The notes under the pieces are model-generated. The model ran no database searches. It saw only the letters and a list, made by a program, of their open reading frames with translations, and was not told the DNA's origin. From Euprymna scolopes (lineage: Eukaryota): a stretch of 64,000 nt of DNA. The stretch is taken from assembly GCA_053919585.1 (NCBI GenBank), contig CM132787.1, one strand, 5' to 3'. The position numbers and the translations under genes were made by a program. The stretch's first letter is position 1; every line of letters begins with the position of its first letter. Positions 3,351 to 36,167 of this stretch are shown piece after piece.

Positions 3351-6300
3351 CTAAGGCAAAGAAGCGTTTAGAGGATAAGAACTAATGACCAGCCGCTCAA
3401 ATCCAAGATCTGTAACACATTTACAATGTAACAGTATTCTGGTATCAGCTTCGTCGTGGTTACACTTTAAGGAATTGACGTTTGTTCCACGGGCTGATTC
3501 TGCAGCCATCCTGTCATGGAATCCTCCAGAAGTCACAACATCACGTTCTTTTTGTGTTAATTTTGCTTGACGAATCAGCTCCATACTCAAGAAGTGTTCT
3601 AAATCTTTTTTGTTCTCTGGGAGGTCAATAAACTGTCTCCAGTTAACAGGTAATGGTAAGTCCGTGTTATTCACTTTGTGACGTATTGGCCGGCTTTTTC
3701 CAATCCGAGAAATTCGAGTGGTATCCTTGATGGTATGTGCTTCATACCGATCAAATACGACATGGACTCTGGAGCATGATTGACTAAAGTGACTAAAGAC
3801 TGCGGTCACAAAATGGTCAGCGAGTTGTCCAAAGTTTTGGATATTTGCAGGTTTTCCAATTGCTTGGACAAGTGCCTGACCATCGATGATCACACAAGTT
3901 TTCAGGTTTGTTATTGGCAGTTGTTTCTCTACAGTTGTTCTTTTCTGGAGAATGTTGCCCAAAGCTGCTTTGTTTGTCGATCGTATTACCCCAGAAGTAT
4001 CTGCGAGTGAAAGTGGAACTGGTGAAAGTTCATAGCTGAGGATTTCCTTTAGGTCAACCTCCCGTCCAGCTTCCTTAGATACAAGCAAGCGTTGGAAGAG
4101 GTTTTGGTCTGCTTTGATAGTCTTTTGCTTGAGGGCTGGATCTTTGCACTGGACTTCATACATGGTTTTTAGGGTTGAGCTTTTCGACTGTCGGAGCTTT
4201 TCATGGAATCCAACAACCTTCTTGATAAGACGTGAAGCCACAAATTCCTGTATTTTCTCTTGTCCTTGTGCGTGTGCTGCCAGATTCTGTAATTTGAAGA
4301 GAAGCTACATCTCGAGTGGCTAGACTAACAACGTTTGGAGTTTGATGTTGAAAGATGCCATAAATCTTCAATTGATCAACAATTTTCTGAACATCTTGCT
4401 TGTCCCGTTTTAGTCTTGAAGGTCCAGCTTCTTTCACATATAAAGAACTATAGTCTTTATCTGCAGTGTGCATGTCCAGCATTAAGTTTGTCTCATGGAC
4501 AATTCTGGTTCGCTCATTAAATGTGAGACACCATTGATCTCTTGCTCCTTCTGATCGTGTTATTCCAACAAGGCCTCCTGCAACTTTACCAACTTTGTTT
4601 ACATGCTCCAAGGCATGATCCGTCGATAGCTGATTGAATGTGTTGTTTGTCGTCTTGACCACAAAGTTTCCATTAATGAACTCATGGTGGACATCAGGGT
4701 GGCTTGTTTCTAGGAGCATGCAATCAAGGTACACTGCTCCCCAGCGGGTGTAATTGACATGGTCATATTGAGCAAACCAGGGTAACATTTTAGCGAAAGA
4801 CGATTTATGCAGGCTCCAGTTTCTGGTTCTCTCAGCACGCAGGAACTGCAGTAAGATGAAAACCATTTTGATGTACGTCAACCAAAATCTGGAAGTTGGT
4901 GGCTGTGTCTCTTGAAAGTCATCCAACAAACTGATGATTCTAGACTGAACATGTTCATCCTCCAGTGCTTTGACGTTGTTGCTGATCACCTCTCGCTGAT
5001 CGTGTGCCTCCAAAGATTCTATGACGTTGACTGATAATGTTTGGATGGCATATTTGTCTACTTGGTGGTCCTGTGCCCATTCGATGAATGTTGGCCAGAG
5101 AATTTTCCATACGGCTTCAAATGTGAGCTTGTGTGCTCGAATCGCCCTGTTGTATGATTTGGCTTGCATGTTGTTCTGAGCTGTGTTCTGACCAAAGACG
5201 GCACTTTCGGCCCATACTTCAAGGAGACCAGAGTCTGCAAAGTGCTTTCCAATGACACACATAAAGTTCTTAATAATGTGGAAACCCCCAAGTCGTAAAA
5301 ATATGTTTTTGCATTGATCACTGTTGGCCCACTGTATTTCCTTGGCTTTGCAATACAGCTGTTGGTCCAAAGTGATGACAGTAGACTGACCAGGATTTAT
5401 AATGCTAGAAATTCTGAGGCATCGCATCATAACCGTCCATAGTGTGTTGTCTTCGTGAGTGGGTGAATTGAGTAGTGGCAAATAACCGATTGTGCAGACC
5501 TCATGTTAGTCTTGAGTTGTAAGTTGGTTGAAACCTGTCCATGCAGGAACATGATCACTGTTAGATCCATGGATTCGAGAAAGAAACCAAGCCATATCTT
5601 TAGCAGAAGCTTCGTTGCACACCTGATCATCTGGTGTAAACATCATTTCCTTCAAGGTGTCTATAAATTTCGGATCCTCGCGACAAGGTCGACAAGGTAA
5701 CTTCTGAAGTTCATGAAGTTCCGGAGGGACTTTCAATGACTTAGATTTCCCAAGAGGAAGAGTGTCCTGCTGTTTCTGTTTGGGTACTACTCTCTGATAC
5801 ACAACCATTTGTGTCGCATGAAATGTTCCCATGCCATCCAATGTTTCTTCAATATTGTCTGCAGCATAATGACAGAACTTGTTTAGTGACACGTTTGATG
5901 GAATAGGCGTGTTTTTATTATCTGCAAACTGTTGCAGATAGTGAACTCCAAGAGTTGTGTCCAGTCTACGCACCTGGTCATAACTGGCACAGTGCCCAGC
6001 GTGATGGACAAGTTCAACGAGCCATTTCGACCGAGTCGCCTGATGAATTGCCAGGCCTAGTCCAACATGTTTTGGTGTAAGCCTTTTACGTTTCGAGACA
6101 GCATAAACAAGGTCTTGACTGATGCTCAATGCGGTCCGTTTCACAAAGTCGTCATCTTCCTCTCTGTCCACTTTCTCTGACAGCATAATACCGAGAAAAA
6201 GAAACAAGCTCTCTGGAATAATTTGTTCTGCATTTTCTTTGCTGACAGATATGCAGTTATCAAGTCCAGGGTGAGATTTTATGTCACTTCTAATGCGTAA

Positions 6301-18237: not shown

Positions 18238-19568
18238 CTTCAGACCAAGGCTGACCTCTTAATCCTTAGGTAAAAGAGCGGCATATCTTTTTATTCTCTT
18301 TATCTCGACCGAAAACTCTCCTTTACTTTCGACTGTGGCTGATCCCTTAATCCTCAGGTAAAAAAGTGGCTTATCTTTAAAATTTTTATATTTATATTTT
18401 TATTACTTGTCTGATTTTTGATGGTTACCGCAAAAAGTTTGAGGGTGACGGTGTTGCTACACTGTCTCCCCCCTTCCCCAACCACCCATTTTTGCGTCCC
18501 CCCCAACCGCCTCTTTTTGCGTTAATGCCCCCCCAACCGCCCCTTTTTGAGTTACTGCCCCCCCTGATATCAAAGCACCGCCCCCAGGGGGGCGGTACCG
18601 CCCACTTTGGGAAACGATGAGTTAGGACGTGGCAGGCTTGGCCGAGGCTGCCTGTGAGCAGTTTGGACGTAATTTGTACGTCTCTCACCACTCCTCCCAC
18701 GTCCAAAGGAAAAGTTAGCTTCAGTGCCCTGTAAAAAGAAGGATGAATATAAAGGGGAACCGTACCTTCGCATTTCACTGCTAACTGCTTCAGCGAGGGA
18801 TGATTCGCTTCTGCCAGTCACACCATTGGGAACGCTACCTTAATCATCTTCAACAGCGCCTTGGTTCTCTTCCCCTTGTTGGTCCTGACAAAGGTCGTCA
18901 TTGCCGAGGCGTCTGCAAAATTCATTTCTTCCCCATGATTGTTGTGCATTGGTTGAGCCTGACCAGCTGTGACCTCTGGTTGCCTTTGAGGTCTGGAAAC
19001 GGCTGCTGTGAGTCTGGCTTGCATATTTTCTCCCCTGGTAGGAACGGAAGCTTCTTGGTGTGCTCTGTTCTCGCCGGTGGGGGGGGGCACAGTGGGCCCA
19101 GATGGCCAATGTTTGGAAATAGAGGTGAAGCATCATCACAAATGACTTTTATAAGATTTTTTTCAAAACTTTTGAGGCATATGATCAACTTGGGTTCATT
19201 TTAATTAGATTTTAACTGATATTTGTCTCTGAAAACAGTTCTGGGACCAAATTGACCTATTTTGGCTGTGTCACAAAATGTCGCGAATTTACTGAAATTT
19301 ACTAAATTCAGAGAAATATTTAAATAGGCATTATTTCAGTTTGGATTGAGATAGGAAAGTGGTTGAGAGCTTGTTAGAAGCGTATGGCCAAGGAGAACAT
19401 AATGGAAGCAATTCATGTTGAGCTAATATACCAGTTTATGTATTGGCTTTTATAAAGTAATGAATCTGTCTGAAATTGTGTATTTCTGTTGAAAATTGCA
19501 CAGGTAACAATACAAACATTATGTGTATTATTGAATTTTCTCAAAACCTCACATAAAGATAATATAAA

Positions 19569-19683
19569 TTAATCAAGAAAAATGTCTTCAATAAGGCTTG
19601 CATACCAGTTCTTGGACAAGCCAAACAACCGATTATGTGAACATATGGCACACTGGCCCCAGATCGCCAAACTTTGGAAATAG
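19569..19683 (-). pseudogene. Diverged transposase C-terminus fused to an internal TIR-like end
   Basis: Encodes SHNRLFGLSKNWYASLIEDIFLD versus SHGRLVGLPKRWYASLVEDIFLD; abuts CACACTG-19bp-TGGAAATAG at 19649-19683. Confidence 0.85.
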
Positions 19684-19968
19684 AGATTAGGCGAAGTCTT
19701 ACTTTGATTTTTCTGGCATTTTCTCGTTTTTTTTTTCAGTTTTATACCCAAGTACAGAGTAACTAAAGCATACTTTGACTTAGAGAAAGTGTATAAAAGG
19801 ATACAGGAACCAAAAATGCTTTGATTTTGTCTAAATTCACGAAATTAGGAGAAATTATAAAATTGGAGTAGTTTCGTTGACTCAACCGAGATAATTCAGT
19901 TTGTGTTATGTTTCTCATTCCATACTGGCAGATAAGAATATAAAATAAAACAACAAATAAATCACCAT

Positions 19969-22149
19969 CTAGTCAAGAAAAATGTCTTCAACGAGGCTTG
20001 CATACCATCGCTTCGGTAGACCTACCAACCGACCATGCGACCGAATGGTGTGATCGTCAGCTCCACATTCCGTGCAAAATTTTCTTGCCTGAAAATGAGT
20101 GGTTATGTTCTGGATGATTGGATCTGATCGTTCCAGTAACCTGGCCATTACATCAGTTAATTGGAGCAGTGGGTCAGTTTTCCTCGACAAGAACTGCAAG
20201 TAGTTGCGAATGTCTTTGTTGTTTGACTCTAAGCATTCCTCTGACAGACTTCCCAGTCCATGAGCATCATTTAGACTCATCAATTCTGTTGAATGATGAA
20301 GAGTCCCATGCAAGGTGTGATTCATCATGACCCATGGGAAGTTGTCACACAAATTGTATGAAGTCTGCTCACAAAGTTCTTTGAACTTCATCAGATCGAT
20401 CTTACGTGACGACGACACAACCGATAGAACAGTGGAGAGCTGACGATGAAGGAGAAGCAGGTTTTCTCGGTGTTTTTCCTCAACTAATTTTTCGATTGAA
20501 GCTAGAACTTCCTCTGAAAAGAAGCGACGGCCTTGTGGACCATTGGTTGATGTCCCACCTTTTCCACCAGCAGAGTTGACTCTATCAAGATACAGGCCTG
20601 TCTCTGTGTAGATCGCTTCGAGAACTCGATCCTTCGCTCGACGGACAGGTTCACCACGAACGTCGGACCTCTCAATCCACTGTTGGTAGTCAGCATGGCA
20701 CCGATACAAAACCTTCAGGAACCACGTTGTTCCATTGATGTACGAATGAGTCACAGTGATGCTTGATTGGTCAGATGTTGTGAGTGGCTTCTTGGTTAAT
20801 CCTTGACGAGTCTCAAAATCTCCTTGTTTTGCTTTGACTTTACCATTCTCATCAACTAGTTCATTGTACAGCTCGAGAGAATTCTTTGCTGATCTGTTAA
20901 TGGGAAAGCCCTCTGCAACCTTGGTTCTGTCAGTCCAATCAGCCTGTTTTGTTGTGCATAGGATGCAATCAGCCCCTCCCAACCCTGAAATGTCCCTTTT
21001 GAATTTCAGATCCTTCATTGAATCGTGTACTATGACATTCACATCATATCCTTGACCATCAGCAGTAACAAAAATTCCATCTGAAGCCAACTCTTGGCGT
21101 GCTTTGTCTGTAGTGGGAACGACCATATTAAGAAGATCTTCATCGGTCTCTTTCTCCCTGATCAAGAATAGTGGTCTTAATGTTCTACAGTTGTTTGGCG
21201 AGTGATTCTGCCACAGACAAAAAAAAGAACCGTCCTGGTAACGAGCAAGTAGTTTCAGTGGTGTAATGCCATACTGGAACATATTTTCAGTTGCGTCCAG
21301 CATACTTGTAGAGTTCCACACTACTTGTTGACCAGCACCGTCACATCCATCTTTAAACACCATTTCAAGGACACCATCTCTGCATTTATCTTTTATGATT
21401 TTCTTAGGGATCAAGGATATGATGGACTCGATCGTCATTTTCACTAGGTCCTTGTACTGCACCTGAACTCCACTGTCATCAAGAACTGGGGAGATACTGG
21501 GGCGGAGCTTTTTACGTCCCTCCAACAACTCATTGCTGGTTGGAAAATAGATTCCCTTCGCAGCAAGTATGTGCCTCATCTTTCTCATTTGCTCCCTACT
21601 CAACGTTAATGAATGCATCAATGCAATCGCTTCATTGATCTCAAAGGAATGAATATCGTTCACATTGGACGAAAATATCTCATACCCAACTCGAGCTGTC
21701 TTCTTTTCCGATTGAATATTCACACGATGAATCATATATCCTAGCAACTGAGTGACTGAAAGCTCAGGACATTCCTTTGCAGCGTATTCTTCAATGTAGT
21801 CGAGCAGACCCTGTGTTCTTTCCTTCTGCATTCTCTCCCCTAAGTTGACAAAACTCTTCCTTTGCTTCTTTCCAACTTGTGGACAGTTCCCTTCCATTTC
21901 GATTTCTTCTTTCGATGCTTGAGCAAGGATTTCGGTGTTTGCTAGGCGTTTCTTTTTCAATCGTTTGAAATGGTTCCATGCATTCAAGAAGAAGCCACTG
22001 ATTTCTTTGTTTTCGTGAAAACCATGAGTTTCTCTGAATTGGCGAAAGCATTTGGCATATTCAGGTGGTTTGGTACGGCATAATGCAGCCTGACTAATGA
22101 TGGCTTTGAAGACCTGATATTCTGTGGTGAGAACATTGTTGCCTGCCAT
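19969..22149 (-). CDS. RAG1-like (Transib superfamily) DDE transposase, 726 aa, uninterrupted
   Basis: KDGCDGAG (RAG1 KESCDGMG, D600), MKDLK...CILC (D708 and CxxC), HTLHGTLHH...SEECLESNNK (HKTLAH...SEGNESGNK, E962), WQNHSPNNCRTLRPL, C-terminal CxxCx4Hx4H. Confidence 0.88.
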   Translation of the reverse strand: MAGNNVLTTEYQVFKAIISQAALCRTKPPEYAKCFRQFRETHGFHENKEISGFFLNAWNHFKRLKKKRLANTEILAQASKEEIEMEGNCPQVGKKQRKSFVNLGERMQKERTQGLLDYIEEYAAKECPELSVTQLLGYMIHRVNIQSEKKTARVGYEIFSSNVNDIHSFEINEAIALMHSLTLSREQMRKMRHILAAKGIYFPTSNELLEGRKKLRPSISPVLDDSGVQVQYKDLVKMTIESIISLIPKKIIKDKCRDGVLEMVFKDGCDGAGQQVVWNSTSMLDATENMFQYGITPLKLLARYQDGSFFCLWQNHSPNNCRTLRPLFLIREKETDEDLLNMVVPTTDKARQELASDGIFVTADGQGYDVNVIVHDSMKDLKFKRDISGLGGADCILCTTKQADWTDRTKVAEGFPINRSAKNSLELYNELVDENGKVKAKQGDFETRQGLTKKPLTTSDQSSITVTHSYINGTTWFLKVLYRCHADYQQWIERSDVRGEPVRRAKDRVLEAIYTETGLYLDRVNSAGGKGGTSTNGPQGRRFFSEEVLASIEKLVEEKHRENLLLLHRQLSTVLSVVSSSRKIDLMKFKELCEQTSYNLCDNFPWVMMNHTLHGTLHHSTELMSLNDAHGLGSLSEECLESNNKDIRNYLQFLSRKTDPLLQLTDVMARLLERSDPIIQNITTHFQARKFCTECGADDHTIRSHGRLVGLPKRWYASLVEDIFLD

Positions 22150-25100
22150 CTGAATATGATAATTTCTTTTTTTTAAACTTCAGTTAACCCGATAATAGCC
22201 TGTAATGAAGAAAAAAGCATAGACATTAACTGAATGGTCATATAGAATAATAGAATACTCAAAATATTTGATAGAACATGTAAAAGCAAACTAAAACTTT
22301 GGCAAAATGCCCGAATTTGGTAATTTGGTCCCAGATCCCGGAAAAATGAAAATTCTATTTGTCAGAAAAAAAAATTTACTGCTAAGATTTACAAAACAAA
22401 TTTGACATAGTTAGAAAGGTCTTAGGCTATATTTTTTGAAACATATATACTTTGATATGTAAATCTTAGCGGTTTTTGAGCTATTTGAGGAATTGAACAA
22501 AAAATAAATGACAATTTTGCTGAAACATTAAGGTAAAATTTCACTAAATAAGCTTTTATCTTATCAAAATTTCATCTATTATACCACAAACAAGACCTGT
22601 TAGAAAAAAAAGATGAATTTAGTTATACAAATTGAAAAAATAACATCAAAAAACCCATTATGGCATTTTATTTACAAATTCTGGCTTAGTTTATATGATA
22701 AGGTTCATATGTAGTCAAGAATATGATCTCGACACGATTTTGAATTTCCGCTAGGTTTGAGATAGCATAAAATCACTTCACGTGATGCTACAGACCTAAT
22801 TTTTTTTTTGTTTGTTCAGAAATTTTATTTACTTACAGAATTTCTATAGTTCAAGGTACATAGAGAAAGTTTTTTTTTAGGCTATTTCCACCTCTGGGCC
22901 CACTGTGGGGGGGGGGTTGGCTTCATGATTGGAGGTGCTTCTTCCACCTGCTCATTTTCGTCCGCTATGATGTTCTTGCGGGCCGAAGAGCTGTGTTCGG
23001 TATCGGGAGCCAGTTTGGGGAGAGCGTTCCGTTCATCCTGCATAGTGGATGTAGTTGCAGGGGTTTCAGGAACCTTCCCCTCCGGCTGGACTTCATGGTT
23101 AGTGTCCATCTGAGGGGGGCTGCGCGAGCCTTCTCTTGCCTTCCTCTTCTTGGCCTTTCTCTCCCTCTTGCCTTTGCTGCTCCCTGAGGCAGGTTCGATT
23201 ACCTCCTCCTCTGATCCGGTCTCTTCCTCCGATTCCTGCAGCTTTCTCTTACTGGCGCCGTTGGGAGGAGGATTGTCTGTATTTTGTTGAGATTGGATTG
23301 TCGCATCGATGGCGAGTGGCCGCTCGAACTCGACTTAGGAGACATTGTGTACAACATGGAGCCGCCATTAGCTCTTTCTCAGTTAATATATAAAGTTGTA
23401 ATCTTAGATACAATTCATGACCGGCCGGGCTTTAGTGGGGGCGGTTACAGGGAGTAAATGGTGGGTTAGTCAAGTATAGCCAACGCCTCGCGTTAGATAA
23501 GGCTAAGGCAAAGAAGCGTTTAGAGGATAAGAACTAATGACCAGCCGCTCAAATCCAAGATCTGTAACACATTTACAATGTAACAGTATTCTGGTATCAG
23601 CTTCGTCGTGGTTACACTTTAAGGAATTGACGTTTGTTCCACGGGCTGATTCTGCAGCCATCCTGTCATGGAATCCTCCAGAAGTCACAACATCACGTTC
23701 TTTTTGTGTTAATTTTGCTTGACGAATCAGCTCCATACTCAAGAAGTGTTCTAAATCTTTTTTGTTCTCTGGGAGGTCAATAAACTGTCTCCAGTTAACA
23801 GGTAATGGTAAGTCCGTGTTATTCACTTTGTGACGTATTGGCCGGCTTTTTCCAATCCGAGAAATTCGAGCGGTATCCTTGATGGTATGTGCTTCATACC
23901 GATCAAATACGACATGGACTCTGGAGCATGATTGACTAAAGTGACTAAAGACTGCGGTCACAAAATGGTCAGCGAGTTGTCCAAAGTTTTGGATATTTGC
24001 AGGTTTTCCAATTGCTTGGACAAGTGCCTGACCATCGATGATCACACAAGTTTTCAGGTTTGTTATTGGCAGTTGTTTCTCTACAGTTGTTCTTTTCTGG
24101 AGAATGTTGCCCAAAGCTGCTTTGTTTGTCGATCGTATTACCCCAGAAGTATCTGAAAGTGGAACTGGCGAAAGTTCATAGCTGAGGATTTCCTTTAGGT
24201 CAACCTCCCGTCCAGCTTCCTTAGATACAAGCAAGCGTTGGAAGAGGTTTTGGTCTGCTTTGATAGTCTTTTGCTTGAGGGCTGGATCTTTGCACTGGAC
24301 TTCATACATGGTTTTTAGGGTTGAGCTTTTCGACTGTCGGAGCTTTTCATGGAATCCAACAACCTTCTTGATAAGACGTGAAGCCACAAATTCCTGTATT
24401 TTCTCTTGTCCTTGTGCGTGTGCTGCCAGATTCTGTAATTTGAAGAGAAGCTACATCTCGAGTGGCTAGACTAACAACGTTTGGAGTTTGATGTTGAAAG
24501 ATGCCATAAATCTTCAATTGATCAACAATTTTCTGAACATCTTGCTTGTCCCGTTTTAGTCTTGAAGGTCCAGCTTCTTTCACATATAAAGAACTATAGT
24601 CTTTATCTGCAGTGTGCATGTCCAGCATGTAGTTTGTCTCATGGACAATTCTGGTTCGCTCATTAAATGTGAGACACCATTGATCTCTTGCTCCTTCTGA
24701 TCGTGTTATTCCAACAAGGCCTCCTGCAACTTTACCAACTTTGTTTACATGCTCCAAGGCATGATCCGTCGATAGCTGATTGAATGTGTTGTTTGTCGTC
24801 TTGACCACAAAGTTTCCATTAATGAACTCATGGTGGACATCAGGGTGGCTTGTTTCTAGGAGCATGCAATCAAGGTACACTGCTCCCCAGCGGGTGTAAT
24901 TGACATGGTCATATTGAGCAAACCAGGGTAACATTTTAGCGAAAGACGATTTATGCAGGCTCCAGTTTCTGGTTCTCTCAGCACGCAGGAACTGCAGTAA
25001 GATGAAAACCATTTTGATGTACATCAACCAAAATCTGGAAGTTGGTGGCTGTGTCTCTTGAAAGTCATCCAACGAACTGATGATTCTAGACTGAACATGT

Positions 25101-33440: not shown

Positions 33441-36167
33441 TCATGGAATCCAACAACCTTCTTGATAAGACGTGAAGCCACAAATTCCTGTATTTTCTCT
33501 TGTCCTTGTGCGTGTGCTGCCAGATTCTGTAATTTGAAGAGAAGCTACATCTCGAGTGGCTAGACTAACAACGTTTGGAGTTTGATGTTGAAAGATGCCA
33601 TAAATCTTCAATTGATCAACAATTTTCTGAACATCTTGCTTGTCCCGTTTTAGTCTTGAAGGTCCAGCTTCTTTCACATATAAAGAACTATAGTCTTTAT
33701 CTGCAGTGTGCATGTCCAGCATTAAGTTTGTCTCATGGACAATTCTGGTTCGCTCATTAAATGTGAGACACCATTGATCTCTTGCTCCTTCTGATCGTGT
33801 TATTCCAACAAGGCCTCCTGCAACTTTACCAACTTTGTTTACATGCTCCAAGGCATGATCCGTCGATAGCTGATTGAATGTGTTGTTTGTCGTCTTGACC
33901 ACAAAGTTTCCATTAATGAACTCATGGTGGACATCAGGGTGGCTTGTTTCTAGGAGCATGCAATCAAGGTACACTGCTCCCCAGCGGGTGTAATTGACAT
34001 GGTCATATTGAGCAAACCAGGGTAACATTTTAGCGAAAGACGATTTATGCAGGCTCCAGTTTCTGGTTCTCTCAGCACGCAGGAACTGCAGTAAGATGAA
34101 AACCATTTTGATGTACGTCAACCAAAATCTGGAAGTTGGTGGCTGTGTCTCTTGAAAGTCATCCAACAAACTGATGATTCTAGACTGAACATGTTCATCC
34201 TCCAGTGCTTTGACGTTGTTGCTGATCACCTCTCGCTGATCGTGTGCCTCCAAAGATTCTATGACGTTGACTGATAATGTTTGGATGGCATATTTGTCTA
34301 CTTGGTGGTCCTGTGCCCATTCGATGAATGTTGGCCAGAGAATTTTCCATACGGCTTCAAATGTGAGCTTGTGTGCTCGAATCGCTCTGTTGTATGATTT
34401 GGCTTGCATGTTGTCCTGAGCTGTGTTCTGACCAAAGACGGCACTTTCGGCCCATACTTCAAGGAGACCAGAGTCTGCAAAGTGCTTTCCAATGACACAC
34501 ATAAAGTTCTTAATAATGTGGAAACCCCCAAGTCGTAAAAATATGTTTTTGCATTGATCACTGTTGGCCCACTGTATTTCCTTGGCTTTGCAATACAGCT
34601 GTTGGTCCAAAGTGATGACAGTAGACTGACCAGGATTTATAATGCTAGAAATTCTGAGGCATCGCATCATAACCGTCCATAGTGTGTTGTCTTCATGAGC
34701 GGGTGAATTGAGTAGTGGCAAATAACCGATTGTGCAGACCTCATGTTTGTCTTGAGTTGTAAGTTGGTTGAAACCTGTCCATTCAGGAACATGATCACTG
34801 TTAGATCCATGGATTCGAGAAAGAAACCAAGCCATATCTTTAGCAGAAGCTTCGTTGCACACCTGATCATCTGGCGTAAACATCGTTTCCTTCAAGGTGT
34901 CTGTAAATTTCGGATCCTCGCGACAAGGTCGACAAGGTAACTTCTGAAGTTCATGAAGTTCCGGAGGGACTTTCAACGACTTAGATTTCCCAAGAGGAAG
35001 AATGTCCTGCTGTTTCTGTTTGGGTACTCCTCTCTGATACACAACCATTTGTGTCGCATGAAATGTTCCCATGCCATCCAATGTTTCTTCAATTATGTCA
35101 ATATTGTCTGCAGCATAATGACAGAACTTGTTTAGTGACACGTTCGATGGAATAGGCGTGTTTTTATTATCTGCAAACTGTTGCAGATAGTGAACTCCAA
35201 GAGTTGTGTCCAGTCTACGCACCTGGTCATAACTGGCACAGTGCCCAGCGTGATGGACAAGTTCAACGAGAGATTTCGACCGGGTCGCCTGATGAATTGC
35301 CAGGCCTAGTCCAACATGTTTTGGTGTAAGCCTTTTACGTTTCGAGACAGCATAGACAAGGTCTTGACTGATGCTCAATGCGGTCCGTTTCACAAAGTCG
35401 TCATCTTCCTCTCTGTCCACTTTCTCTGACAGCAAAATACCGAGAAAAAGAAACAAGCTCTCTGGAATAATTTGTTCTGCATTTTCTTTGCTGACAGATA
35501 TGCAGTTATCAAGTCCAGGGTGAGATTTTATGTCACTTCTAATGCGTAACGCACAGTGATGCAAAGTTAGCATTGCATCTGTCTCTGATTGTGAGAACTG
35601 GGTTTGCTTGAGATCATTCACAAATGTGTTGGTCTCCATTTCCTCAGATTTATTTTTCAATGTCTGAACATCAATCTTGGATGACTGTGTAGAAAACAAC
35701 AGCTGTGGTTGATGTGGATTAAGTTGTGGTACAAAGTATATTTGCTCGGGAAGAATTTGGTGCAGTTTCTCTTTAAGGCGAAATCTATTATCCCGGTATG
35801 ATCCAGCTTCAATGCCAAATTCTCTGCGTAAGGAAGAGTACCTATCCCAAACATCATTCAGCGAATAGATATCACCTCGTGCGAATCCAGTTGACACTTC
35901 TGACGCGACTTTGTTAAAGCATATATCTCTGGGCGTTTCAGCTGTAATTGTATAGGACTTGGATGCTTTTCTATTGAACTCGACATAACACTGAAGATGA
36001 TATCTGGCATCTGCCGCTACAAGATCAGTAACTCCTGCTAGACGACACTGCATAACATGGCTCATTTGAGCTCCTTCAAGAATTTTGTCAGAAACTTCAA
36101 AAGTTGCAACTAAGTATGTTTCTTTGTTGCTTTTCTTTTGGCAGAAGATGCACAAGTCAGTGTTCAT
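33441..36167 (-). pseudogene. Longest open Academ family 1 transposase segment (908 aa)
   Basis: Lacks the stop and 9-bp deletion of copies A and C. N-terminus is cut by the nested insertion and the C-terminus is frameshifted. Confidence 0.7.

What the first reader, a model, noticed from the sequence alone, without database searches (positions are those of the whole stretch)
19088..22907. RAG1-like transposon with RSS-like asymmetric ends: CACAGTG + 19 or 10 bp + TGGAAATAG
Seen: left end CACAGTG (19088-94), 19-bp spacer, TGGAAATAG (19114-22). Right end (reverse complement) CACAGTG (22901-07), 10-bp spacer, TGGAAATAG (22882-90). The ORF is uninterrupted with the RAG1 DDE triad. Known: CACAGTG is the V(D)J RSS heptamer, the RAG 12/23 rule uses spacers differing by about one helical turn, and some Transibs have asymmetric TIRs. 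Inference: this family may obey a 10/19 pairing rule with its own nonamer and may be recently active.
Basis: partly seen in the sequence, partly recalled or inferred. Interest (0 to 1): 0.88.

Follow-up and report, generated by a model that had tools for sequence, protein, structure and literature searches.

The report
Young Transib transposon, asymmetric 10/19 ends
This is an intact, recently mobile single-gene relative of the RAG1 recombinase (a Transib DNA transposon, probably in a mollusc) whose two ends keep one short and one long spacing between two conserved motifs. Such RSS-like asymmetry is already described for some Transibs, but here it comes with a seemingly live element on which a pairing rule could be tested without RAG2.

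Summary
CACAGTG + 19 bp + TGGAAATAG lies at 19088-19122, and its inverted partner CACAGTG + 10 bp + TGGAAATAG at 22882-22907. Between them is one uninterrupted 726-aa RAG1-like transposase gene on the minus strand.

It is a Transib, not a RAG1L/RAG2L transposon. The best solved relative is HzTransib, and there is no second gene.

An empty-site allele in public DNA runs skips exactly 3825 bp, which is the 3820-bp element plus a 5-bp GGGGG target duplication. The insertion is therefore polymorphic and young.

The short/long architecture is not a private accident:
- Complete elements with 55-60% identical transposases, a 669-bp non-autonomous derivative and partial elements all show 10 bp at one end and 19 bp at the other, with the 9-mer kept and the sequence beyond it randomised.
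- A sister clade (46% identity) keeps the 9-bp difference (19/10, 23/14) with other distal motifs and with the long end on the other side of the gene.

The protein has a RAG1-NBD-like domain and a CTT-type zinc knuckle.

Asymmetric Transib ends, NBD and CTT1 in Transibs are published (Kapitonov & Jurka 2005; Tao 2022), so this is a new member of a known kind. A strict 10/19 pairing rule remains untested. The scan noted the same 19/10 ends on another piece of this genome.

The parts
22901..22907 (-). 5' terminal heptamer CACAGTG (outermost bases of the element on the gene's upstream side)
   Evidence: The element boundary is confirmed by contigs that end or leave exactly at 22907/22908 (records 3, 13, 22, 28).
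22891..22900 (-). 10-bp 'spacer' of the 5' end: a conserved TR2-like GGCCCAGA plus GG
   Evidence: It is identical in L003, L005 and L125. It co-varies with the 3' end in L126 (GACCCAGA at both ends).
22882..22890 (-). distal 9-mer TGGAAATAG of the 5' end
   Evidence: It is invariant in 6 of 6 short ends of related elements, and the sequence just inside it is unrelated between lineages.
22150..22881 (-). 5' untranslated / presumed promoter region of the element
   Evidence: There is no ORF of 80 aa or more. There are only patchy matches to relatives.
19969..22149 (-). Transib transposase gene, 726 aa. It has an NBD-like domain (about residues 93-166), an RNase-H fold with D270 and D380, CxxC at 395-398, H614/H619, E638, and a C-terminal CX2CX4HX4H knuckle at 692-705.
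19649..19683 (+). internal, second 19-type end: CACACTG + 19 bp + TGGAAATAG. It is the original 3' end of the transposase-bearing element.
   Evidence: D4, 83% identical to 19086-19131
19570..19648 (-). 79-nt copy (76%) of the last 26 codons and stop of a sister-family transposase gene, abutting the internal end
   Evidence: (D2). Contigs follow 19566-19648 and then diverge, or jump from 19648 to 20174 (record 4 and the joints table).
19123..19569 (+). 3' untranslated region of the sister family, now the outer part of the composite element
   Evidence: Depth is continuous with the rest of the element.
19088..19122 (+). outer 3' end in use: CACAGTG + 19 bp (GGCCCAGA, a variable TGG, CCAATGTT) + TGGAAATAG
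   Evidence: Contigs of other loci and species begin exactly at 19087/19088 (records 3, 10, 11).
19083..19087 (.). left copy of the 5-bp target-site duplication GGGGG (its position within the G run is ambiguous)
   Evidence: the empty-site contig joins 19084 to 22910, skipping 3825 = 3820 + 5. There are 9 G on each side in the filled allele and 13 G in the empty allele.
22908..22912 (.). right copy of the 5-bp target-site duplication GGGGG

Best explanation
Window 19088-22907 is an intact, autonomous, recently transposed Transib DNA transposon. It carries a single gene for a RAG1-core-like DDE transposase and no RAG2-like partner. It belongs to a clade, seen mostly in marine and mollusc-associated assemblies, with the hallmarks that Tao et al. 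2022 gave for 'Subgroup I' Transibs.

Its ends are bipartite. A 15-bp terminal block (heptamer CACAGTG plus the TR2-like GGCCCAGA) and a distal 9-mer (TGGAAATAG) lie 2 bp apart at the 5' end and 11 bp apart at the 3' end. Counted from the heptamer, these are 10-bp and 19-bp spacers.

Shown:
- the boundaries of the element;
- the 5-bp target duplication;
- presence/absence polymorphism of the insertion;
- conservation of both motifs and both spacings, while everything inside the 9-mer diverges.

Inferred mechanism:
- A transposase dimer nicks at the CAC and forms hairpins on the flanks, as RAG and HzTransib do.
- Its catalytic core and C-terminal zinc knuckle hold heptamer + TR2.
- Its N-terminal NBD-like three-helix domain, on a flexible linker, reads the 9-mer.
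- Because the two NBDs act as a pair, a complex with one near and one far 9-mer (offset about 0.9 helical turn) is favoured. Selection therefore keeps one short and one long end.

The copy in the window is a composite. A complete element (19649-22907) sits in the tail of a sister-family transposase gene, and the unit now moves with the sister's outer 19-type end.
For: Identity:
- Pfam RAG1 at 7.4e-13.
- HzTransib 6.7e-27, BbRAG1L 1.2e-13 and RAG1 7e-11 by sequence; 4.7e-61, 5e-42 and 1.6e-25 with a 32-sequence profile.
- The AlphaFold model (pLDDT 87) superposes on HzTransib at Z 31.3 and on RAG1 at Z 30.8.
- There is no other gene between the ends.

Mobility:
- An empty-site contig skips 3825 bp. 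In run X1 its depth is 18.9, equal to the flanks. In X5 it is 49 against a flank depth of 98.
- The whole of 19088-22908 lies on one contig at about 2.5 times flank depth, with 11 substitutions and 5 gaps.
- Other flanks are seen in runs of two other organisms.
- RNA-seq assemblies hold 0.78-0.86 of the sampled words.

Ends (table):
- Short ends have 10 bp in 6 of 6 cases: window, L003, L005, L126, L125, L134.
- Long ends have 19 bp in 6 of 6 cases: window outer, window inner, L003, L004, L126, L125.
- The 9-mer is exact in 11 of 12 cases.
- Between lineages only the terminal 35-39 nt are alignable.
- L126 changes GGCCCAGA to GACCCAGA at both ends.
- The sister clade keeps the 9-bp offset: 19/10 with TGGTAAAAC in L128/L129, and 23/14 with TATTTCGT and a perfect TSD CGGGT in L127. 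There the long end lies upstream of the gene.

Protein domains:
- Model residues 91-166 align to RAG1 387-460, the NBD.
- There is a colinear profile match to GGRPRQHLLSLTRRAQKHR.
- CX2CX4HX4H is conserved, and relatives carry the canonical CX2CX3GHX4C.

Literature:
- The NBD reads the nonamer and helps enforce the 12/23 rule; CTT* binds TR2 (10.1101/2023.08.20.553239; PMC7204232).
- AanRAGL has a 4/13 bipartite TIR, which is also a 9-bp offset (PMC9435367).
Against: - No biochemical test exists.
- RAG1 without RAG2 loses the preference for asymmetric substrates (PMC4840297), and the TIR asymmetry of amphioxus ProtoRAG is thought to matter little (PMC7204232).
- The sequence match of the NBD-like segment to RAG1 is not significant on its own (domain E 11). 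It rests on the structural superposition of a predicted model.
- Related elements share ancestry, so repeated 10/19 pairs are not independent observations. The polarity flip is a single event on the tree.
- Target duplications could not be seen in most metagenome contigs (only L127). Their two flanks may come from different copies.
- Subgroup I membership was judged from features, not from a tree with the published reference sequences.
Confidence: 0.7

Rival explanations
1. The asymmetry is functional but is not a pairing rule. The two ends are told apart for another reason, such as ordered binding or cleavage, different affinity of left and right ends as in many cut-and-paste transposons, or a host bending factor needed at one end only. 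Symmetric pairs would still be cut, only less well.
For: Differentiated left and right ends are common in DNA transposons (general knowledge). RAG1 alone does not enforce 12/23 (PMC4840297). The long end carries extra semi-conserved sequence (CCAAACTT) that could be a site of its own.
Against: The long end sits downstream of the gene in the window's clade and upstream in the P0036/P0038 clade, so the asymmetry is not tied to promoter or gene orientation. The same 9-mer is kept at both ends. The constant feature is the 9-bp offset (10/19, 10/19, 14/23).
Confidence: 0.22
2. The 9-bp difference is a neutral indel that arose once in an ancestor and has simply been inherited. The transposase reads only the terminal 15 bp.
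For: All sampled elements are related. Invertebrate RAGL transposases are thought to rely mainly on the terminal 15-17 bp (PMC7204232).
Against: - Over tree paths of more than one substitution per site in the protein, the sequence just inside the 9-mer is randomised, yet the 9-mer is exact in 11 of 12 ends.
- No spacer has gained or lost a base in 16 ends.
- The middle of the long spacer varies in sequence but not in length.
- The distal motif has changed in sister lineages while the 9-bp offset stayed.
- The non-autonomous L125 and the composite window copy each kept one end of each type.
Confidence: 0.05
3. It is a RAG1L/RAG2L (RAGL) transposon or a domesticated RAG1-like host gene rather than a Transib.
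For: It has an NBD-like domain, a CTT1-like knuckle and a segment between the CxxC and the next conserved block that HzTransib lacks, all of which are RAG1L-like.
Against: There is no second ORF of 80 aa or more between the ends apart from one overlapping the transposase gene. The element is only 3.8 kb. HzTransib is the best match by sequence and Z-score. TIRs, a TSD and an empty-site allele show a mobile element, not a fixed host gene.
Confidence: 0.02

Closest known systems
Insect Transib families with RSS12-like 5' and RSS23-like 3' ends (Transib5 of D. melanogaster; Transib2_AG, TransibN1-N3_AG of Anopheles; Kapitonov & Jurka 2005, PMC1131882)
   Same: Single-gene RAG1-core-like transposase. 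Ends begin with a CAC heptamer, then a spacer, then a second conserved block. The short spacer is at the 5' end and the long one at the 3' end. 5-bp TSD at a G/C-rich target.
   Different: Spacers are 10/19 (offset 9), not 12/23 (offset 11). The distal motif is TGGAAATAG, not an A-rich AAAAAAATC-like nonamer. The first 8 bp of the spacer are conserved (TR2-like). The host is probably a mollusc. The protein has the NBD-like and CTT1-like parts.
Subgroup I Transibs of Tao et al. 2022 (PMC9435367; ctenophore, Hydra and other members)
   Same: Asymmetric TIRs. A C-terminal CTT1-type zinc knuckle. A retained region after the CxxC that Subgroup II (HzTransib) lacks. An NBD equivalent.
   Different: The last ligand of the knuckle is H and not C, and GH is DH in this family. 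Placement on a tree with the published Subgroup I sequences was not done. The 10/19 + TGGAAATAG ends were not found by string search in the held supplement text, but its sequences are printed in 10-letter blocks, so the blank says little.
AanRAGL of Aureococcus anophagefferens (Tao et al. 2022)
   Same: Bipartite TIR: a 13-bp terminal block and a 10-bp distal block separated by 4 or 13 bp, which is the same 9-bp offset as the 2/11 bp seen here. 5-bp TSD. Polymorphic insertions show activity.
   Different: It carries a RAG2L gene. The motif sequences are different. The host is a protist.
PflRAGL-A of Ptychodera flava (Martin et al. 2023, 10.1101/2023.08.20.553239)
   Same: The same end organisation: heptamer, TR2, asymmetric spacer, nonamer-like motif. 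It comes together with an NBD in the RAG1-like protein.
   Different: It is a two-gene RAGL transposon. The offset is 10 bp. The nonamer is A/T-rich and the NBD has a GRPR/K motif; here the corresponding stretch is GKKQRK.
HzTransib of Helicoverpa zea (solved structures 6pqn-6pr5)
   Same: The closest solved relative (Z 31.3, 24% identity over residues 166-726). Cut-and-paste transposition through nick and hairpin, with a 5-bp TSD (literature).
   Different: The solved chains start at the equivalent of residue 166, so no NBD-like domain is matched. HzTransib has about 18 residues where this protein has 57 after the CxxC.
Vertebrate V(D)J RSS and the 12/23 rule
   Same: The identical consensus heptamer CACAGTG. 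Two classes of signal that differ by about one helical turn. An NBD-like domain in the enzyme.
   Different: The nonamer sequence, the spacer lengths (10/19) and the conserved spacer sequence all differ. There is no RAG2. The pairing rule has not been shown.

Membership tests
Transib superfamily | [quoted passage not shown] | tested here: met
   D270, D380 and E638 are invariant and aligned with the RAG1 catalytic motifs.
Transib superfamily | Terminal inverted repeats that begin with a CAC heptamer | tested here: met
   (15-bp perfect TIR CACAGTGGGCCCAGA)
Transib superfamily | 5-bp target-site duplication | tested here: met
   the empty allele skips 3825 = 3820 + 5 (GGGGG). L127 has a perfect CGGGT TSD.
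Transib superfamily | No RAG2-like gene in the element | tested here: met
   there is no independent ORF of 80 aa or more between the ends besides the transposase gene.
Subgroup I Transib (Tao et al. 2022) | Asymmetric pair of TIRs | tested here: met
Subgroup I Transib (Tao et al. 2022) | CTT1-type C-terminal tail (CX2CX3GHX4C) | tested here: inconclusive
   this protein has CX2CX4HX4H, with the same ligand spacing but the last C replaced by H and GH by DH. Relatives P0047 and P0050 carry the canonical motif. The BbRAG1L superposition reaches model residue 711.
Subgroup I Transib (Tao et al. 2022) | Equivalent of the RAG1 alpha11-alpha12 region that Subgroup II has lost | tested here: inconclusive
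   there are 57 residues between query 406 and 463 against 18 in HzTransib, and this stretch aligns without a break to BbRAG1L. Helices are modelled at 408-413, 421-431 and 445-448. They were not mapped helix by helix to RAG1 alpha11-alpha12.
Subgroup I Transib (Tao et al. 2022) | Branches with the published Subgroup I sequences, nearer to RAG1L than Subgroup II | not tested
   No reference sequences were available as tool objects. By E-value HzTransib (Subgroup II) is still the best solved match.
RAGL (RAG1L-RAG2L) transposon | Convergent RAG2-like kelch/PHD gene beside the RAG1-like gene | tested here: not met
   the element is only 3820 bp.
RSS-type signals obeying a 12/23-like rule | Two classes of signal with a conserved heptamer and distal motif and two fixed spacer lengths | tested here: met
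   10 bp in 6 of 6 short ends and 19 bp in 6 of 6 long ends. The sister clade has 10/19 and 14/23.
RSS-type signals obeying a 12/23-like rule | A-rich nonamer ACAAAAACC and 12/23-bp spacers | tested here: not met
   the distal motif is TGGAAATAG and the spacers are 10/19.
RSS-type signals obeying a 12/23-like rule | Efficient cleavage only of a short/long pair | not testable with these tools
   This needs biochemical or cell-based assays.

The most novel reading that the evidence does not exclude
A single-protein Transib transposase with an NBD-like domain and no RAG2 itself enforces synapsis of one 10-type and one 19-type end. The mechanistic root of the 12/23 rule would then predate the capture of RAG2, contrary to the proposal that RAG2 established the preference for asymmetric substrates (PMC4840297). 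This clade offers a probably active element on which to show it.
Probability: 0.3. Interest if true: 0.8.

Novelty: new member of a known kind. Interest (0 to 1): 0.55.

Why it matters
How and when the 12/23 rule arose is an open point in the origin of V(D)J recombination. One view credits RAG2 (Carmona et al. 2016). Others point to asymmetric ends in Transib and RAGL transposons (Kapitonov & Jurka 2005; Tao 2022; Martin 2023). No asymmetric-ended Transib appears to have been tested biochemically; the solved and assayed one is HzTransib.

This element offers several things together:
- an uninterrupted gene;
- exact ends and a confirmed 5-bp TSD;
- presence/absence polymorphism;
- probable transcripts;
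- an NBD-like domain;
- natural 'experiments': a composite with two long ends, a miniature derivative, and a sister clade with flipped polarity and other distal motifs.

That makes it a practical candidate for asking whether a RAG2-less enzyme prefers short/long pairs. As a genome feature it is otherwise an ordinary young DNA transposon.

Tried and rejected
- Exact-protein look-up of the window's transposase: not on record.
- Contigs of the two closest relatives (P0001 at 90%, P0002 at 70%) do not reach the ends.
- The one metagenome scan used too loose a pattern (8 + 9 fixed bases with a 0-20 gap). Its gap histogram therefore says nothing.
- DNA for P0027 and P0029 (krill genome) could not be fetched.
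- The 3' end of L134-L137 and the 5' end of L004 lie outside or were not recognisable in their contigs. The 3' end of the decayed L005 copy has the 9-mer but no recognisable heptamer.
- TSDs are absent around L003, L125, L126 and L128/L129. I take this as flanks of different copies joined by short-read assembly, not as evidence against the boundaries. Only L127 and the window's own empty site are informative.
- String searches of the Tao 2022 supplement for the end motifs or protein motifs found nothing usable, because the sequences are printed in 10-letter blocks.
- The 3-mismatch matches to the TIR core at 5322 and 34562 are an unrelated duplicated sequence with no 9-mer.
- Removing the element does not single out a TSD length by restoring a reading frame in the flank.
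- A reading as a RAGL transposon or a domesticated gene was rejected (see rivals).
Full report
**Observation.** On the plus strand CACAGTG occupies 19088-19094, a 19-bp stretch follows, and TGGAAATAG occupies 19114-19122. On the minus strand CACAGTG occupies 22907-22901, 10 bp follow, and TGGAAATAG occupies 22890-22882. The two ends share a perfect 15-bp inverted repeat, CACAGTGGGCCCAGA (I12). This 15-mer has no other exact copy in the 64-kb window. The ends differ by a single 9-bp block placed between that core and the shared 9-mer. Between them lies one uninterrupted ORF, 19969-22149 on the minus strand, of 726 aa. Because the gene is on the minus strand, the 10-bp end is the element's 5' end and the 19-bp end its 3' end.

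**What the gene is.**
- It matches Pfam RAG1 (PF12940, 7.4e-13).
- Among solved structures it matches the Helicoverpa zea Transib transposase best (6.7e-27), then amphioxus RAG1L (1.2e-13) and RAG1 (7e-11). A profile of 32 homologues raises these to 4.7e-61, 5e-42 and 1.6e-25.
- D270, D380 and E638 are invariant in the 32 sequences. They align with the CDG, YDEK and SEGNES motifs that hold the RAG1 catalytic residues.
- An AlphaFold model (mean pLDDT 87) superposes on HzTransib (Z 31.3, residues 166-726) and on RAG1 (Z 30.8).
- No second gene lies between the ends.

It is therefore a Transib, not a RAG1L/RAG2L transposon.

**Boundaries, target duplication and age.** I laid Logan contigs of four DNA runs on 18400-23600.
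- Two runs of 'organism A' contain a contig that joins 19084 directly to 22910. It skips 3825 bases, which is the 3820-bp element plus 5.
- The filled allele has nine G on each side and the empty allele has thirteen. The target duplication is therefore GGGGG, the canonical 5 bp of Transib and RAG.
- In run X1 the empty-site contig has the same depth as the flanks (18.9). In X5 it has half the flank depth (49 against 98). The insertion is polymorphic.
- The element itself lies on a single contig, 19088-22908, at about 2.5 times flank depth. It differs from the window copy by 11 substitutions and 5 gaps.
- Contigs from two other organisms start or stop exactly at 19087/19088 and 22907 and continue into different flanks.
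- RNA-seq assemblies, including oligo-dT and poly-A libraries labelled mollusc or invertebrate metagenome, hold 0.78-0.86 of the sampled words.

**Is the asymmetry more than a private indel?** I fetched contigs that encode relatives of the transposase and read their ends (table).
- In the window's own clade and its neighbours, every short end has exactly 10 bp. These are the window, L003 (60% protein identity), L005, L126 (55%), the miniature L125 and L134 (44%).
- Every long end has exactly 19 bp. These are the window outer end, the window inner end, L003, L004 (61%), L126 and L125.
- The 9-mer is exact in 11 of 12 ends; the exception is TGGAAATAT in L126.
- Between lineages only the terminal 35-39 nt can be aligned, and immediately inside the 9-mer the sequences are unrelated.
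- L126 changes GGCCCAGA to GACCCAGA at both of its ends.
- The 669-bp non-autonomous derivative L125 kept one end of each type.
- In a well-supported sister clade (P0036/P0038, 46% identity; tree) the 9-bp offset persists with other distal motifs. L128/L129 have 19/10 with TGGTAAAAC. L127 has 23/14 with TATTTCGT and a perfect 5-bp TSD, CGGGT. In this clade the long end lies upstream of the gene, not downstream.

So over long divergence the constant features are the terminal 14-15 bp, the presence of a distal motif at both ends, and a 9-bp difference in its distance. It argues for selection on one short plus one long end, independent of gene orientation.

**Anatomy of the 'spacer'.** It is not free sequence as in an RSS. 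Its first 8 bp (GGCCCAGA) are as conserved as the heptamer. This resembles the TR2 region of RAGL transposon ends, which is important for cleavage by amphioxus RAGL and is bound with the help of the C-terminal tail CTT* (PMC7204232; 10.1101/2023.08.20.553239). In the long end these 8 bp are followed by three or four freely varying bases and a semi-conserved CCAAACTT. The organisation of heptamer, TR2, asymmetric spacer and distal motif is the one described for Ptychodera RAGL-A ends, which have a 10-bp asymmetry. The 2/11-bp separation of the two conserved blocks parallels the 4/13-bp separation reported for the Aureococcus RAGL transposon (PMC9435367).

**Protein parts that could read such ends.**
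- Model residues 91-166 form three helices preceded by a basic, disordered stretch (GKKQRK at 93-98). They superpose on RAG1 387-460, the nonamer-binding domain, in chains that include it.
- The family profile aligns colinearly with GGRPRQHLLSLTRRAQKHR of RAG1. That stretch alone is not significant (domain E 11).
- The C-terminus carries CX2CX4HX4H at 692-705, conserved through the family. Two distant relatives have the canonical CX2CX3GHX4C of CTT1/CTT*.
- After the CxxC at 395-398 this protein has 57 residues where HzTransib has 18, and the stretch aligns to amphioxus RAG1L.

Together with the asymmetric ends, these are the features that Tao et al. 2022 give for Subgroup I Transibs (PMC9435367). 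I could not place the protein on a tree with their sequences, so membership is probable but not proven.

**Composite structure.** Inside the element, 19649-19683 is a second 19-type end (CACACTG, 19 bp, TGGAAATAG). It is 83% identical to the outer end. Directly before it, 19570-19648 is a 76% copy of the last 26 codons of the transposase gene. The simplest reading is that a complete element (19649-22907) inserted into the tail of a sister-family transposase gene, and the unit has since moved using the sister's outer end. Three points support this:
- depth is uniform across 19088-22907;
- contigs of three organisms cross 19648/19649;
- other contigs follow 19566-19648 and then leave, or jump to 20174, as expected of intact sister elements.

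The composite again pairs a 19-type end with the 10-type end.

**Mechanism proposed.** The steps shown are the boundaries, the TSD, the polymorphism and the conservation pattern. The rest is inferred from established knowledge of RAG, HzTransib and amphioxus RAGL:
- a dimer nicks at the CAC and makes hairpins on the flanking DNA;
- the core and the zinc knuckle hold heptamer and TR2;
- the paired NBD-like domains bind the two 9-mers;
- the geometry favours one near and one far 9-mer.

RAG1 without RAG2 loses the preference for asymmetric substrates (PMC4840297), which is the main reason for caution.

**Novelty.** Transib families with RSS12-like 5' ends and RSS23-like 3' ends were described in 2005 (PMC1131882). 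Asymmetric ends, CTT1 and NBD equivalents in Transibs were described in 2022 (PMC9435367). This is therefore a new member of a known kind, with its own numbers (10/19, offset 9) and its own distal motif. Its value is practical: it is a seemingly live, RAG2-less element with an NBD-like domain and natural end variants, on which the origin of the asymmetric pairing preference could be tested. Other first-stage notes of this scan report the same 19/10 ends and the same stacked 3' ends on other pieces of this genome. I could not inspect those sequences.

Noticed in passing
window 19570-19683: There is a second, internal 19-type end (CACACTG + 19 bp + TGGAAATAG). Directly before it is a 76% copy of the last 26 codons of the transposase gene. 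The element is a composite that now moves with a sister family's outer 3' end.
   Followed up: partly
L128:729-5765, L129:95-5005, L127:335-4770: A sister clade (46% protein identity) keeps the 9-bp end asymmetry but with the long end upstream of the gene and other distal motifs. L128/L129 have TGGTAAAAC at 19/10. L127 has TATTTCGT at 23/14, with a perfect TSD CGGGT.
   Followed up: partly
L127:335-385 and 4720-4770: The distal motif of L127 read with one more base (CTATTTCGT) is 7/9 identical to the reverse complement of TGGAAATAG. This may be an inverted distal motif or chance.
   Followed up: no
L125:500-1168: A 669-bp non-autonomous derivative in a JGI metagenome contig has one 19-type and one 10-type end and pieces of the 5' untranslated region. 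Its flank holds a direct repeat of about 70 nt.
   Followed up: partly
window 21886-22149 (protein residues 1-88): The N-terminal 88 residues are modelled as confident helices (pLDDT 71-92) but align to no solved chain. They lie in front of the NBD-like domain and their role is unknown.
   Followed up: no
window 18574-18747 and 23272-23600: The flanks contain very high-depth repeats (word depth up to 31,000 against about 100 for single-copy flank in run X5), with many alternative continuations.
   Followed up: no
window 18400-19087 and 22908-23600: The insertion sits in a run of 13 G (minus strand: prolines) inside an ORF-like, lysine/glutamate/proline-rich reading frame on the minus strand. 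That frame stays open across the junction whatever TSD length is removed. It may be a host exon or another repeat.
   Followed up: partly
window 5322-5336 and 34562-34576: At least 90 nt of identical sequence occurs at two places 29.2 kb apart. It was found through a 3-mismatch resemblance to the TIR core and is not Transib-related.
   Followed up: partly
L134:3702-4725, L126:3460-4120: The 3' untranslated regions of related elements carry tandem arrays of 150-200-nt units. In L134 these push the 3' end beyond the contig.
   Followed up: no
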